Positions 26,582-30,697 of a stretch of DNA of 64,000 bases are shown here, piece after piece. The DNA comes from Calcarisporiella thermophila CBS 279.70 (lineage: Eukaryota; Fungi; Calcarisporiellomycota), in assembly GCF_041956535.1 (NCBI RefSeq), contig NW_027192200.1, positions 267,477 to 331,476 of the forward strand, given 5' to 3'. Each line of letters begins with the position of its first letter. Positions within the stretch are counted from its first letter, which is position 1. The notes under the pieces are model-generated. The model worked only from the letters and a program-made list of their open reading frames with translations. It made no database searches and was not told the origin of the DNA. The position numbers and the translations under genes were made by a program.

Positions 26582-29500
26582 TCAGTGCTCACTAGGGGTG
26601 GTACTCTTGGCCAGCATGTACCGTCCCGTAAGGAAATCAAACTCGTCCTCATTTCGCACCAGGGCCTGGTATACATGGTATGGGACAAGAAGTTTGCGGC
26701 TCGTGCTCGCCCCCTGACCTTTCCTCCCTGCGGTAGCAACGGCCTTCGAGGCCAAGCCATCCTCGCTAGCGGGGGAGGCTCTTGCTTCCGGCGCCGCTTT
26801 CTTCTCATCCTCGCCCACACCATCCTCTTCCCTCTGATCCCTTGAGCCGACGACATCCGTGCTCTGGCACGCCTGCGCCACATCAAGTCGCCGCTGCTTC
26901 AGATCCGGTTGCTCCTCGCTCTCCTCAAGCCGGTAGACCTCGACGGATCGGCGCATCACATTTCGCAAAAATGCCTTCGCCGCCATGTACAAGAGCCCAC
27001 CCACAATGGCCTTGTCTTTTCCCACGATTTCGTTTCGATCTCGTTTCGCCCCGTAGACAGGTTTTTCGACTATGGTCCGCGTGGTTGGGAGTTTCAGCTG
27101 ATTCAGAACGCGACACACCCATTCCACCCCGCGGAGATCGATCACGCCACATTCGAGCGGCTCGGCACTGCTGAGCCAGTCCAGTGCCTCGCGAATTTTG
27201 GGCGTTCCCGCGCTTCCAACGAAATCTGATACCTGTGCCTGATCATCCACCTCCACCTCCATCTCATCGTCCCCCTCATTCCCCTCGTTATCGTCTAGCA
27301 CATCCTGCATGATCACGTCGGCAACCGTTAAGCTGCTCAGCCGACTTCGACGATTCACCATCTCGGCCGGCTGTCTTGAGCATGCAAAATGGAATATACT
27401 CCCTTTCGCCCCCTCGTTCTTCTCATCCGCCCTCTCTTGCTTAGTATGCCATGAGCGAGGACTTCCGCAAAACTTACAGTACATGTCTTGGAATCGAGTT
27501 GACTTCATCGGGGGTGGTCGCTGGTTGAGGGAGCTTAAGGAGTCCGTCTCCTGGCTTTCCCAGAGCGCCATTTTGTGTGAGAGTTGACTGCTCCCTTCCT
27601 TCCGCGGAGTGTGCCCACTTCGACGGCACCAGAGCATAACCTCCTTCGTGGTGAGTTTTTGTGCTGCTTCTTTCTCCCTCTCCACCGTGGAAAGGGTGGG
27701 GTTTAGATTTGCGATTTGGTTTTGGATATGCTTACGAAGCAAATGAGCACGATGCCACTAACCGAAAAAAAAAAAATACAAAATATTATTCATCCACTTG
27801 AGCATCAACAGACTAGGAAAAAAACGTGAATTTACCTCGGTCGACCTTTGACGCCCAATGCCCCACTCCAAGAAAGTGCCCGCGCCTTCTGCACAAGCAT
27901 AGGGCAGCTCAGCCGGCGCAACCTCGTGTCCGCTTGGCCTCACGATCGGGAATGCGGTCACGCCCACTTGTAGATAATCTTCCAAAACATGCCGTTCCGT
28001 TTTCTTTACCGCGTCCTGGCTTTCATTTCTTTCCGCCCTCGTTTCATTGTTTCCTTCCTCGCCAGTTTGGTTAGCGTCAAGTGGCTCGCTTCCTTGTGTA
28101 TGTGACTCCATTTTCCCTTGTTCGTTCGCGGACGGCTGCGTTGGTGCCGTAACAAACTCGGTGTTCCGGTCGAGCTCGAGGTCATATACGCGTTCGGTTC
28201 CGAGCACTTGTCGGCCACAATGAGTATCGTCTAACTGTAGAGATTTAAGTCCCCCCCCCAAAAAAAAATAAAGGATGAATATTTGAGTGTTTAAGCTAAG
28301 AGCGAATAAAAGTTGCTCAGAGGGAAGCTTACCTTGAGCACATGAATAATATCCACGGGTTTGTTCCGCCGATCCACAAAGTGCAGCTGCACTCTTACGG
28401 GCGCCTCGCCCCATCCATACCGCTTGAGGTGGAAGGGGGGCTTCTTCACATCGACCACATCATGCGGCCGATAGCTCGGATGTAGGTAGAACCGGACCTT
28501 AGACAGGAAGGTCGCCACATCAGGGTGGTTGGCTGGGCTTGCCACGTAGATCATCCACTTGTGGGTGAATTTTCCCATGGCCGGGTCGCGCCGCTCAGGA
28601 GGCACGAATTTTGAGACGTTTCCAACAATCACACGGCGCTTGACATAGAACCGCGACCCATCCGTGGAGTTGAGTGGCAGTACGCCGTACACGAGTAGAT
28701 CGGCAACCCGGTTTGCTTCTTGCTGTGCGACTTCAGTATTGGGCAGACGATCCTGAGTTGCTGGCCGATTTAGCGCCTCCTGTGACAGATCAGCTTGGGG
28801 TGGGTGTTTGTGGAGTGTATCCCTATCGGCAGGTGCAGCAGGGGCACTCTTCGAAGCGTTGGCCCCATCAGGAACACTGTCAACACGAACGGGAACAACC
28901 ACGGATTTGGATGCAATGGGTTTTGGGGTAGCTTGAGGCAATTCCCTTGGTACGTCGATGCCAGCTGGAGTGAACGAGCCCATTTCTGGGGATATCAAAT
29001 TAGAATCTGTCCTTTCGCTGGCATCCAGCAACATCTCTCTATCTAAGGCCTGACCGTCAGCCGCTATTCTTTCAGCTATGGGCACACCGAGGCTCTTTAG
29101 ACCTGCAGCCTTATTCTCTCTCTCATCATGCATGGTAACATCTTGCTCATGTGCACCCATATCTTTGAGGACCCGGCTCTCCTTCCCAGGACCCCGATCT
29201 CGACCCGGTTCTCGTTCATTTTCGGACTCACTCTCTGAAGAGTCGCCACTACTGCCACTGCTACTGCTACCACTATCACCGCTACTACCGCCACTACTAC
29301 TACTGCTGCTGCTGCTGCCACTATTCCCTTCATTCTCGCTACTGTCGTCCCCGCTTTCACTTTCATTCTCACTCTCTATTGCAGTCTGCTGAACAGGAAC
29401 ACGGCTGAGTTTCTTCCCCGATTTGCCCGCTATGTGGGGGAGAGTGGCGGGGGCTGGGGAGGATGCACTGGTGGCTGTGGAGGCCGTCTCAATAGTGGAC

Positions 29501-30697
29501 TCTGGGAGAGCAGAGGGGGGCGGGGTCGAGGTGGATGCGATGTAGTCGCTAGCATCCGACTCTGCCTGTGCGAGATGGTGGGAGGCAGCCGCTCTCACCT
29601 CATCCACGTCCATATCCACCTCCTCTTCAAACACCTTAATTTTAGGCTAAAAGAAAACGTTGTTTTAGAGAGAACAGCCCGACCCAGCCCAAATATGCAC
29701 TGCTTACCCTTTCTGCTGGAGCCGCTGGTTTAGGTGGTGTGGCTGCAATCCGAGGGAATGGCCGTGATAAGAGCTTGCGTCGGCATGGGTGATCTGGAGG
29801 TACTTCACTCTCATCCTTTCCACACATACACAAAAACAAAGACAATGAGAAATCTGAAATACAAGTTGCGGTCGACATTTTAGGTAGGAATGGAAAACTT
29901 ACCACCGGAATACCGGCAAGTCGATTTGCTTCATCGTGGCTTGCAAATTCCAAGTGATGCACGATCCGGCAATGGTTCAAGAAGCCTTGATGATTGGCAA
30001 AATCGTCGCGGTGACATTTGGGACAGGAGAGCCTAGTTGGGATGAAAGGTGAGTATAAGTGGTCTCAACATCGACAGTGCGGGGGAGGGCCTACTTCACA
30101 AATGTGCCATCTTCACGCTGCGCATACAGAGCGGACCGCCCAGTATAGGATGGTTGCGATTGACTTCGACCATATACAGGACGGCGCACTCGCCCTGAGC
30201 TTGTGGTAAGGAGGGGTGGGGGGGAAGCAGCGCGTCGTGATGTTGATCGGGTTGAGTACTGTTCGGGAGGAGGATCCTCTATCAGGTAGTGAAAAGTAAG
30301 GAGTAAGGGGAGGGTTAGCCAACCGCCATAACTTGAGCGAGGGAAGCAGGACTCACTATTTATGATGGCATATCTAAGATCTTCGAGGGCTTCTCTTGCC
30401 TTGCGGATTTCCTCTTCAATGGCCCTAATCTCTTGGTGCTTGAGCAAGATCTCGACATCGAATTGGTGATCGATGACATCAACGATCTTTTTACGGGTCA
30501 TCTCATCTAAAACATGGTAACAAGCAGAGGTCATTGGATTGGTTTTCTCCGGCTTGGGTACCTAAAGAGTCGTTCAACGTACCTCGAGGAACAGGCTTCA
30601 ATGAGCTGCCCTCTGCGGGCGTAGGAGGGGCGGATGGGTTTGTCTTCCCTCGTGGTAGTCTCTTGCGCGGGGATTCTTCTTTCATGGCTGATACCAT
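26582..30697 (-). CDS. YEATS2: YEATS2-like chromatin reader with additional Ahc1-type C2H2 zinc finger (multi-exon)
   Basis: Spliced order: coiled coil IDHQFDVEILLKHQEIRAIEEEI; finger CPKC..QGFLNHCRIVH; YEATS domain IVGNVSKF..THKWMIYV..LHPSY..PPFHLKRYGWGE; WGIGRQRSTE/WHRA; WCRRSGHTP; terminal HVYQAL..FDFLT. Confidence 0.88.

What the first reader, a model, noticed from the sequence alone, without database searches (positions are those of the whole stretch)
26582..30697. YEATS2 orthologue fused to an Ahc1-type zinc finger: possible link between animal ATAC and yeast ADA complexes
Seen in sequence: one spliced ORF holds an N-terminal coiled coil (KIVDVIDHQFDVEILLKHQEIRAIEEEIRKAREALEDLR), a C2H2 finger (REDGTFVKLSCPKCHRDDFANHQGFLNHCRIVHHLEFASHDEA), a YEATS domain, a WGIGRQRSTEWHRA..WCRRSGHTP block and a terminal histone-fold-like block (HVYQAL..FDFLT). 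Recalled knowledge: the YEATS subtype (IVGNVSK, HPSY, PPFHL) and both C-terminal blocks resemble metazoan YEATS2 of ATAC, not Yaf9/Taf14/Sas5. The EILLKH coiled coil and the QGFLNHCRI finger resemble fungal Ahc1-like proteins of the ADA complex. ATAC is usually described as metazoan. Inference: Ahc1 and YEATS2 may be reciprocal truncations of one ancestral protein, and this fungus may retain an ATAC-like Gcn5 complex.
Basis: partly seen in the sequence, partly recalled or inferred. Interest (0 to 1): 0.8.

Follow-up and report, generated by a model that had tools for sequence, protein, structure and literature searches.

The report
Fungal YEATS2 carrying the Ahc1 finger
This fungal gene is a full-length counterpart of animal YEATS2 that also carries the helix and zinc finger of yeast Ahc1, which suggests that the yeast ADA and animal ATAC histone-acetylation complexes share one ancestral scaffold protein.

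Summary
Window 26582-30697 (minus strand) holds one 8-exon gene of 1191 codons. All eight exon translations match, exactly and contiguously, the public protein P0176 (Calcarisporiella thermophila VTP21DRAFT_838).

Four blocks are collinear with metazoan YEATS2:
- an N-terminal helix
- a YEATS domain (136 bits to human YEATS2, 59 to GAS41/Yaf9)
- the 3HBD domain
- a C-terminal histone fold

Between the helix and YEATS lies a C2H2 finger of Pfam family PF25909 (zf-C2H2_AHC1).

The helix-plus-finger module aligns with ascomycete AHC1-like proteins (hhalign 99.9%, E 5.5e-36). Their helix also aligns with metazoan YEATS2 (95.5%, E 1.6e-8).

The full architecture occurs in chytrids, Zoopagomycota, Mucoromycota, the ascomycete Saitoella and the holozoan Pigoraptor. 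Agaricomycetes keep the finger, a decayed YEATS and 3HBD. Saccharomycotina and Pezizomycotina keep only helix and finger. A tree of the module follows the species tree. This genome has a single copy.

So Ahc1-like proteins are most likely truncated YEATS2 orthologues, and metazoans lost the finger. The held literature calls Ahc1 yeast-specific and ATAC metazoan-specific.

Not shown: RNA evidence, S. cerevisiae Ahc1p itself, or complex composition. I found one ADA2 and a ZZZ3-like ZZ; KAT14 and MBIP were not tested.

The parts
26582..30697 (-). Whole gene: 8 exons, 1191 codons plus stop. It is the YEATS2 orthologue with the AHC1-type module.
   Evidence: Exon translations are identical to P0176.
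30583..30697 (-). Exon 1 (residues 1-38 plus 1 nt). Basic, Pro-rich leader specific to this species.
   Evidence: Only a self hit in the iterated search.
30357..30506 (-). Exon 2: the conserved N-terminal helix (residues about 40-88; motif IDHQFDVEILLKHQE). It is shared with metazoan YEATS2 and with AHC1-like proteins.
   Evidence: jackhmmer hits 14/14 metazoa and 53/54 AHC1-like proteins. hhalign results. AF2 predicts one helix with pLDDT above 90.
30095..30278 (-). Exon 3: variable linker plus the first beta strand of the finger domain (REDGTFVK).
   Evidence: Alignment A5; AF2 model.
29903..30032 (-). Exon 4: the AHC1-type C2H2 finger. Likely Zn ligands are C153, C156, H170 and H175 (C-x2-C-x13-H-x4-H). 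R158, F161, G166 and R172 are invariant.
   Evidence: 474 representative proteins at E<=1e-3. PF25909 precomputed on P0176. Invariant columns. AF2 gives beta-beta-alpha plus a helix and a strand, pLDDT 96-98.
29708..29815 (-). Exon 5: conserved post-finger motif DESEVPPDHPCR and a linker.
   Evidence: Consensus of A3; 98 relatives for residues 194-260.
28668..29646 (-). First part of exon 6: the PKIKVFEEEVD motif, then about 300 residues of acidic, Ser/Gly-rich low-complexity linker.
   Evidence: no relatives beyond near kin.
28136..28668 (-). YEATS domain (residues about 556-700), interrupted by intron 6. H618, S620, Y621, W641, G642 and E643 are kept. Position 644 is Ala where relatives have Phe.
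27590..27985 (-). 3HBD three-helical bundle (PF22951; residues about 751-856), interrupted by intron 7.
   Evidence: Present in 14/14 metazoan YEATS2 and 87/89 agaricomycete homologues.
27380..27478 (-). Conserved Cys motif Y-C-K-x-C-G...H...C (C894, C897, H904, C926). Possibly a second zinc site.
   Evidence: C894, C897 and C926 are invariant in 39/39 sequences; H904 in 22/39. Not detected in metazoa.
26585..27160 (-). C-terminal histone-fold-like domain (residues 1000-1191) with an insertion of about 60 residues before the last helix (VPYHVYQALVRNEDEFDFLT).
   Evidence: Matches the extreme C-terminus of metazoan YEATS2. In the VIA-align wide search the top rows are almost all histone folds: Dpb3 Z 5.8, NF-YC Z 5.5, NC2beta Z 5.2. 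The best PDB profile hit is NC2alpha at E 0.22.

Best explanation
The gene encodes the fungal orthologue of YEATS2, the scaffold and histone-reader subunit of the Gcn5-containing ATAC complex, in what is probably its ancestral opisthokont form.

Domain order: N-terminal helix, AHC1-type C2H2 finger, YEATS acyl-lysine reader, 3HBD bundle, a Cys motif, and a C-terminal NC2alpha/NF-YC-like histone fold.

Shown here: the gene model, the homology of each block, its distribution across taxa, and single copy in this genome.

Inferred evolution: the Ahc1-like proteins of Saccharomycotina and Pezizomycotina are orthologues of this protein that lost YEATS, 3HBD and the histone fold after the split from Taphrinomycotina. 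Agaricomycetes are intermediate. Metazoan YEATS2 lost the finger.

Inferred mechanism: the helix-plus-finger module is the only part kept in Ahc1, so it is the part that docks the protein onto the Gcn5-Ada2-Ada3-Sgf29 HAT module, directly or through a small adaptor as Ahc2 does in yeast. The YEATS domain binds acylated H3 tails. The histone fold pairs with NC2beta. On this reading, yeast ADA is a reduced descendant of an ATAC-like complex.
For: Gene model: identical to P0176.

YEATS subtype: 136.6 bits (E 1.4e-38) to human YEATS2 against 59 bits for GAS41/Yaf9.

Other YEATS2 blocks:
- 3HBD, found once in the genome and in all metazoan YEATS2.
- N-terminal helix against metazoan YEATS2: hhalign 97.9%, E 4.2e-13.
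- C-terminal block matches the metazoan C-terminus and has a histone-fold shape.

Ahc1 link:
- PF25909 is precomputed on P0176 and on more than 60 fungal YEATS2-like proteins.
- Fungal YEATS2-like against Pezizomycotina AHC1-like: hhalign 99.9%, E 5.5e-36 over 168 columns.
- Metazoan YEATS2 N-terminus against AHC1-like: 95.5%, E 1.6e-8.

Phyletic series:
- Saitoella has YEATS plus PF25909.
- Agaricomycetes have PF25909 plus PF22951 with a weak YEATS.
- Saccharomycotina, including 'Protein AHC1 [Yarrowia]', and Pezizomycotina have helix and finger only.
- P0229 from Pigoraptor chileana has the full set.

Orthology:
- The module tree follows the species tree: Dikarya 89/77, Ascomycota 89/83, and Saitoella sister to Saccharomycotina plus Pezizomycotina at 92/97.
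- Only one such gene exists in this genome.

Yeast biology: Ahc1 and Ahc2 form the ADA-specific module on the HAT module (PMC3159981).
Against: - No RNA data are available for this gene.
- S. cerevisiae Ahc1p itself was never retrieved. The link to it rests on the Pfam family name, on Saccharomycotina proteins named AHC1, and on a paper stating that Ahc1p has a putative zinc finger (PMC9127870).
- Beyond helix and finger, no homology between AHC1-like and YEATS2-like proteins was detected.
- The AHC1-type finger also occurs in multi-finger proteins without YEATS (P0001-P0003), so the finger alone does not prove orthology.
- Whole genomes of Dikarya were not checked for a separate YEATS2.
- The holozoan case is a single transcriptome-derived protein.
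- Histone-fold matches are modest (Z 5-6; sequence E 0.22).
- No binding was tested.
- Only one ADA2 was found, so there is no Ada2a/Ada2b split as in animals.
Confidence: 0.78

Rival explanations
1. AHC1-like proteins of Dikarya are old paralogues, or products of domain shuffling, that merely share a mobile helix-plus-finger cassette with fungal YEATS2. On this reading ADA and ATAC are not related through this subunit.
For: The finger occurs in other contexts, such as tandem arrays in P0001-P0003 and two fingers in the Chytriomyces proteins. No homology was found outside the module. Dikarya genomes were not searched whole.
Against: Helix and finger occur together in the same order in all 42 sampled lineages. 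There is one copy in this genome. Intermediate architectures exist in Saitoella and Agaricomycetes. The module tree matches the species tree. No Dikarya YEATS2-type protein other than these appeared among the hits.
Confidence: 0.12
2. The gene is a true YEATS2 orthologue, but it works outside any Gcn5 complex in this fungus, for example as a stand-alone chromatin reader. The Ahc1 resemblance would then have no bearing on complex composition.
For: No interaction data. There is only one ADA2. KAT14 and MBIP orthology were not tested here. The cage position is Ala where 34 of 39 relatives have Phe.
Against: In both lineages where members were studied, the members are Gcn5-complex subunits: ATAC (PMC13631227) and ADA (PMC3159981). 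A ZZZ3-like ZZ domain exists, and SGF29 has an adjacent GNAT gene.
Confidence: 0.08
3. The gene model is a false join of two neighbouring genes: an Ahc1-like gene and a YEATS gene.
For: No RNA evidence could be obtained.
Against: - The introns are 61-99 nt with GT-AG ends.
- Exon 6 carries a class-specific motif and the YEATS domain in one 438-codon open frame.
- Conserved motifs bridge the junctions.
- The same architecture appears in well over 60 species from several annotation pipelines.
- The public model is identical.
Confidence: 0.02

Closest known systems
Metazoan YEATS2 (ATAC complex scaffold and H3K27ac/crotonyl reader)
   Same: Four blocks are collinear: the N-terminal helix, a YEATS domain about 60% identical to human YEATS2 in the PDB alignment printed, the PF22951 3HBD, and a C-terminal NC2alpha-like histone fold.
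   Different: This protein carries an AHC1-type C2H2 finger and a CC(H)C motif that were not detected in metazoan YEATS2. 3HBD follows YEATS closely rather than about 750 residues later. One cage residue is Phe-to-Ala. The histone fold has a long loop insertion.
Ahc1 / AHC1-like proteins (ADA HAT complex component 1; Pfam PF25909) of Saccharomycotina and Pezizomycotina
   Same: The QF-x-LEILLKH helix is followed, 41-147 residues later, by the same C2H2 finger with identical invariant residues.
   Different: Ahc1-like proteins have no YEATS, 3HBD or histone fold. Their C-terminal halves are unrelated and lineage-specific, for example the ...LQKFIPLSRFF end in yeasts.
Agaricomycete 'YEATS domain-containing' proteins (e.g. 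Obba rivulosa P0133) and Saitoella P0389
   Same: Same family and same domain order. They link the two ends of the series.
   Different: In Agaricomycetes the YEATS domain is so divergent that Pfam PF03366 is not recorded, and the C-terminal match covers only the first half. Saitoella keeps YEATS and the full C-terminal domain; PF22951 is not listed for it.
Yaf9/GAS41 and Taf14/Sas5 YEATS proteins
   Same: They share the YEATS fold.
   Different: The subtype differs: 59 and 21 bits against 136. The genome encodes its own Yaf9-like and Taf14-like genes elsewhere, on contigs C2 and C1.

Membership tests
YEATS2 (ATAC subunit) | YEATS domain of the YEATS2 subtype | tested here: met
   Human YEATS2 chains score 134.6-136.6 bits (E about 1e-38). 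The next families, GAS41/Yaf9, score 59 bits.
YEATS2 (ATAC subunit) | Acyl-lysine pocket residues (LHPSY and GWGEF motifs) | tested here: met
   H618, S620, Y621, W641, G642 and E643 are present. Position 644 is Ala where 34 of 39 relatives have Phe. The effect on binding is unknown.
YEATS2 (ATAC subunit) | PF22951 3HBD domain downstream of YEATS | tested here: met
   65.7 bits, above the 27-bit cut-off, and a single locus in the genome. The same domain is recorded on metazoan YEATS2.
YEATS2 (ATAC subunit) | Conserved N-terminal helix | tested here: met
   jackhmmer scores 47-61 bits on 14/14 metazoan YEATS2. hhalign 97.9%, E 4.2e-13.
YEATS2 (ATAC subunit) | C-terminal NC2alpha-like histone fold | tested here: inconclusive
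   Homologous to the metazoan C-terminus. The structural matches are nearly all histone folds, but at Z 5-6. Sequence match to NC2alpha is E 0.22. Foldseek found nothing.
YEATS2 (ATAC subunit) | Physical membership of a Gcn5-Ada2a-Ada3-Sgf29-ZZZ3-MBIP-KAT14-WDR5-NC2beta complex | not testable with these tools
   Gene presence only: one ADA2, a ZZZ3-like ZZ (best PDB hit ZZZ3, 43 bits, against p62 at 36), SGF29 with an adjacent GNAT gene, and NC2beta.
AHC1-like (Pfam PF25909, ADA HAT complex component 1) | AHC1-type C2H2 finger | tested here: met
   PF25909 is precomputed on P0176. The local Pfam copy lacks this model. Independent checks: phmmer 41-70 bits to AHC1-like proteins in 1.84e9 sequences and hhalign E 5.5e-36.
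AHC1-like (Pfam PF25909, ADA HAT complex component 1) | QF-x-LEILLKH helix upstream of the finger | tested here: met
   Present in 53/54 Pezizomycotina and all sampled Saccharomycotina members, in the same order.
AHC1-like (Pfam PF25909, ADA HAT complex component 1) | Short architecture without reader domains, as in yeast Ahc1 | tested here: not met
   This protein also has YEATS, 3HBD and a histone fold. I therefore file it as YEATS2, the full-length orthologue of Ahc1-like proteins, and not as an Ahc1.
AHC1-like (Pfam PF25909, ADA HAT complex component 1) | Direct similarity to S. cerevisiae Ahc1p, and binding to Ahc2 and the HAT module | not tested
   S. cerevisiae Ahc1p did not appear in any result. 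The nearest named members are Yarrowia 'Protein AHC1' (P0367) and Cyberlindnera P0404.
Yaf9/GAS41 or Taf14/Sas5 | YEATS subtype, with a coiled-coil or ET C-terminal domain | tested here: not met
   Scores are less than half those for YEATS2. Separate Yaf9-like and Taf14-like loci exist.

The most novel reading that the evidence does not exclude
Yeast Ahc1 is the truncated orthologue of YEATS2, so the 'yeast-specific' ADA complex is a reduced ATAC complex. ATAC-like complexes with a YEATS2 scaffold would then predate the animal-fungal split and still exist in early-diverging fungi such as this one. The helix-plus-finger module would be the universal anchor to the Gcn5 HAT module, and Ahc2 might correspond to another ATAC core subunit.
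Probability: 0.6. Interest if true: 0.8.

Novelty: new variant of a known kind. Interest (0 to 1): 0.72.

Why it matters
The papers I could read describe the two proteins as unrelated:
- ATAC is called metazoan-specific (PMC13631227, 2026).
- Ahc1 is said to have no orthologue in flies (PMC6468242) or to be found in S. cerevisiae only (PMC9676040).
- No held paper links Ahc1 with YEATS proteins.

A protein that carries the diagnostic parts of both, together with a graded series of domain loss across fungi, gives a simple common origin for two Gcn5 complexes that have been treated as unrelated.

It also names the likely HAT-module docking element of YEATS2. That makes the origin of ATAC testable in tractable fungi such as Mucor, Rhizopus, Spizellomyces and Saitoella.

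Public databases already show the domain co-occurrence, so the novelty lies in the interpretation and not in the sequence.

Tried and rejected
- **RNA evidence:** The look-up of sequencing runs listed no run.
- **Local Pfam on the finger exon:** no hit, but the local library lacks PF25909, so the blank means nothing.
- **ESM Atlas on the finger exon:** only a weak lead, a PF25909 cluster at score 0.78.
- **ESM Atlas on the GNAT exon next to SGF29:** only generic bacterial GNAT clusters, so it says nothing about KAT14.
- **Foldseek against PDB:** nothing significant for either model.
- **VIA-align on the N-terminal model:** swamped by coiled coils, so uninformative for the finger.
- **Finger remnant in metazoan YEATS2:** none detected by jackhmmer or hhalign.
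- **Wider homology between AHC1-like and YEATS2-like proteins:** none beyond the module.
- **Second Ada2:** not found among the ZZ loci. L017 is Rsc8/Swi3, and L012 and L015 look like NBR1 by eye, PB1-like and two ZZ, unscanned.
- **S. cerevisiae Ahc1p:** not retrieved in any search. Eberharter 1999 and Spedale 2012 are not held.
- **Complex prediction:** not run. The NC2beta histone fold is split over four exons and no stored protein id was available for it or for Ada2/Ada3.
- **One paper search:** badly framed and returned nothing useful.
- **Joined spliced model:** Searches used single exons by reference. After they used the database protein P0176, which proved identical to the model.
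Full report
**1. Gene model**

The minus strand of window 26582-30697 contains eight exons joined by short GT-AG introns: 30697-30583, 30506-30357, 30278-30095, 30032-29903, 29815-29708, 29646-28333, 28234-27836 and 27757-26582. Together they give 1191 codons.

Each exon was searched by reference. 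A later search returned the public protein P0176, 'uncharacterized protein VTP21DRAFT_838 [Calcarisporiella thermophila]', 1191 aa. All eight exon translations are exact, contiguous substrings of it. The window is therefore from that thermophilic Mucoromycotina fungus or an identical sequence, and the public annotation uses the same model. From then on P0176 served as the full-length reference.

That this is one gene rests on four points:
- the Pfam 3HBD domain is split exactly at intron 7
- conserved motifs run across the exon 4/5 and 5/6 junctions
- one 438-codon exon holds both a class-specific motif and the YEATS domain
- the same architecture occurs in well over 60 species

**2. It is a YEATS2 orthologue**

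- The YEATS domain scores 134.6-136.6 bits (E about 1e-38) against human YEATS2 structures. GAS41 and Yaf9 score 59 bits, AF9/ENL 35 and Taf14 21.
- The genome has two other YEATS loci, which by eye are Yaf9-like and Taf14-like.
- PF22951 (3HBD) occurs once in the genome, in this gene. It is recorded on metazoan YEATS2 from cnidarians to echinoderms.
- Iterated searches inside the collected protein set show four blocks shared with 14 metazoan YEATS2 proteins, in the same order. These are the N-terminal helix (14/14), YEATS (14/14), 3HBD (14/14) and the extreme C-terminus (9/14, more with further iteration).
- Profile-profile comparison of the fungal N-terminal module with the metazoan N-terminus gives 97.9%, E 4.2e-13 over the helix.
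- The C-terminal 192 residues fold, at mean pLDDT 75, into helices whose best matches in an exhaustive structural search are almost all histone folds. Examples are Dpb3 at Z 5.8 with 83 of 92 residues aligned, NF-YC at Z 5.5 and NC2beta at Z 5.2.
- The best sequence-profile match in the PDB is NC2alpha, though not significant (E 0.22). [quoted passage not shown] 2008 name in their title (cited in PMC13631227). I score this feature as inconclusive but consistent.
- The pocket residues H618, S620, Y621, W641, G642 and E643 are kept. Position 644 is Ala where 34 of 39 relatives have Phe.

**3. The Ahc1 link**

The 43-residue finger exon, searched against 1.84 billion representative proteins, gave 474 hits at E<=1e-3. 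Local domain mapping split the listed 150 into two classes.
- The first class has helix, finger and a YEATS2-type YEATS. It comes from Chytridiomycota, Zoopagomycota, Mucoromycota and Glomeromycotina.
- The second class is 580-780 aa with helix and finger only. UniProt names its members 'AHC1-like C2H2 zinc-finger domain-containing protein' and JGI names them 'ADA HAT complex component 1'.

The local Pfam copy lacks PF25909. The precomputed annotations list PF25909 on P0176 and on most fungal YEATS2-like proteins, but on no metazoan YEATS2.

Further comparisons:
- An alignment of 39 fungal YEATS2-like proteins matches an alignment of 54 Pezizomycotina AHC1-like proteins at 99.9%, E 5.5e-36. 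The match covers 168 columns, P0176 residues 35-198, which is helix, linker and finger.
- The metazoan YEATS2 N-terminus alone matches the AHC1-like alignment at 95.5%, E 1.6e-8. Ahc1-like proteins are thus tied to animal YEATS2 even without the fungal intermediates.
- Nothing else is shared. The AHC1-like proteins have no YEATS or 3HBD.

**4. Phyletic series and orthology**

- Agaricomycetes carry PF25909 plus PF22951 with a YEATS so divergent that PF03366 is not recorded. An iterated profile still finds it in 89/89.
- A Saccharomycotina query recovered Yarrowia 'Protein AHC1', Lipomyces, Dipodascopsis, Geotrichum and Cyberlindnera, all with helix and finger only.
- The same query also recovered Saitoella coloradoensis (Taphrinomycotina), 910 aa, with PF03366 plus PF25909 and the full C-terminal domain.
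- P0229, an EukProt protein labelled 'Opistho-2', has helix, finger, YEATS, 3HBD and the C-terminal block. Clone Opistho-2 is the holozoan Pigoraptor chileana (PMC7147346).
- A maximum-likelihood tree of the helix-plus-finger module (42 rows, 191 columns) follows the species tree. Dikarya has support 89/77, Basidiomycota 100/99 and Ascomycota 89/83. Saitoella is sister to Saccharomycotina plus Pezizomycotina at 92/97.
- In this genome, both the finger exon and the module profile hit only this gene.

The simplest reading is a single ancestral opisthokont gene with the full architecture. The finger was lost on the animal stem or within it. YEATS decayed in Agaricomycetes. YEATS, 3HBD and the histone fold were lost in the common ancestor of Saccharomycotina and Pezizomycotina.

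**5. Structure of the module**

With 42 aligned sequences, AlphaFold2 gives mean pLDDT 83. It predicts one long helix (P0176 residues 40-88), a disordered linker, and a compact domain at pLDDT 96-98. That domain is a beta hairpin and helix (a classical beta-beta-alpha finger) followed by a further helix and strand.

Invariant residues across all lineages are C153, C156, R158, F161, G166, H170, R172 and H175. This makes C-x2-C-x13-H-x4-H the likely zinc site. The Cys after H170 varies, so it is probably not a ligand. No solved structure resembles the domain beyond generic C2H2 fingers.

**6. Is there an ATAC-like complex here?**

This was only partly tested. The genome has:
- one ADA2 with ZZ_ADA2 and SANT exons (L013) and no second copy
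- a ZZ domain whose best solved relatives are the ZZZ3 ZZ domain (43.1 and 38.5 bits) ahead of p62 (35.6) (L016)
- SGF29 with a GNAT-domain gene tail-to-tail beside it
- a clear NC2beta gene about 19 kb away, which every eukaryote has

Earlier unchecked notes of this scan report KAT14-, MBIP- and ZZZ3-like genes in this genome. I could not test KAT14 or MBIP orthology.

**7. Literature**

In the held library no paper links Ahc1 with YEATS proteins, and none describes a fungal YEATS2.
- A 2026 review calls ATAC 'metazoan-specific' (PMC13631227).
- Soffers et al. 2019 state that flies have no Ahc1/Ahc2 orthologues (PMC6468242).
- A 2022 survey says Ahc1 is found in S. cerevisiae only (PMC9676040).
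- Lee et al. 2011 show that Ahc2 tethers Ahc1 to the HAT module (PMC3159981).
- A 2022 paper notes a putative zinc finger in Ahc1p (PMC9127870).

Many NCBI records already name the early-fungal proteins 'YEATS domain-containing protein 2', and Pfam records both domains on them. The sequence-level facts are therefore public. The inference that Ahc1 is a truncated YEATS2 appears not to be published in what I could read.

**8. Verdict**

- the architecture is ancestral, not a fusion in this fungus
- the helix is as much a YEATS2 feature as an Ahc1 feature
- there is no Ada2 duplication

Confidence is about 0.9 that this is the YEATS2 orthologue and about 0.75 that Ahc1-like proteins are its truncated orthologues. 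It is about 0.5 that the protein sits in an ATAC-like Gcn5 complex in this fungus. The main gaps are RNA evidence, a direct comparison with S. cerevisiae Ahc1p, whole-genome censuses in Dikarya, and any biochemistry.

Noticed in passing
window 28395-28409 (P0176 residues 640-644): The YEATS pocket motif reads GWGEA where 34 of 39 fungal and holozoan relatives have GWGEF. Only this species has Ala at that position (3 have Thr, 1 has Ser). It may enlarge or open the end of the acyl pocket.
   Followed up: partly
window 27380-27478 (P0176 residues 894-926): A Y-C-K-x-C-G...H...C motif has C894, C897 and C926 invariant in all 39 YEATS2-like proteins aligned, including Pigoraptor, and H904 in 22 of 39. 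It may be a second zinc site. It was not detected in metazoan YEATS2 and has no Pfam model.
   Followed up: partly
window 26720-26960 (P0176 residues about 1100-1158): In this species the C-terminal histone fold carries an acidic, low-complexity insertion of about 60 residues between the long central helix and the last helix.
   Followed up: partly
proteins P0001, P0002, P0003, P0004, P0008: The AHC1-type finger also occurs in tandem. There are two copies before the YEATS domain in the Chytriomyces proteins. P0003, P0002 and P0001 gave 2, 3 and 15 matched stretches and have no YEATS; their origin is unknown. The finger is therefore a more widely used module.
   Followed up: no
L016 (G000:C9:479305-482415), minus strand: A multi-exon gene has a ZZ domain closest to human ZZZ3 (2fc7, 43 bits). 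Its upstream exons have no Pfam match and no SANT/Myb exon was seen in the pieces scanned. It is a candidate ZZZ3/Atac1 relative.
   Followed up: partly
L019:5500-8050 (G000:C13:about 298000-300550), plus strand: A multi-exon gene ending in a GNAT acetyltransferase domain lies tail-to-tail with SGF29. NC2beta lies about 19 kb away on the same contig (L022). It is a possible KAT14/ATAC2 candidate; orthology was not tested.
   Followed up: partly
L020 and L021 (G000:C18:407388 and C11:681103): Two nearly identical NF-YB/HAP3 histone-fold genes, a recent duplicate pair.
   Followed up: no
proteins P0398 and P0404: Some Saccharomycotina AHC1 proteins carry a second precomputed family, PF25910, next to PF25909. 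It is absent from the local Pfam copy and its relation to the YEATS2 blocks is unknown.
   Followed up: no
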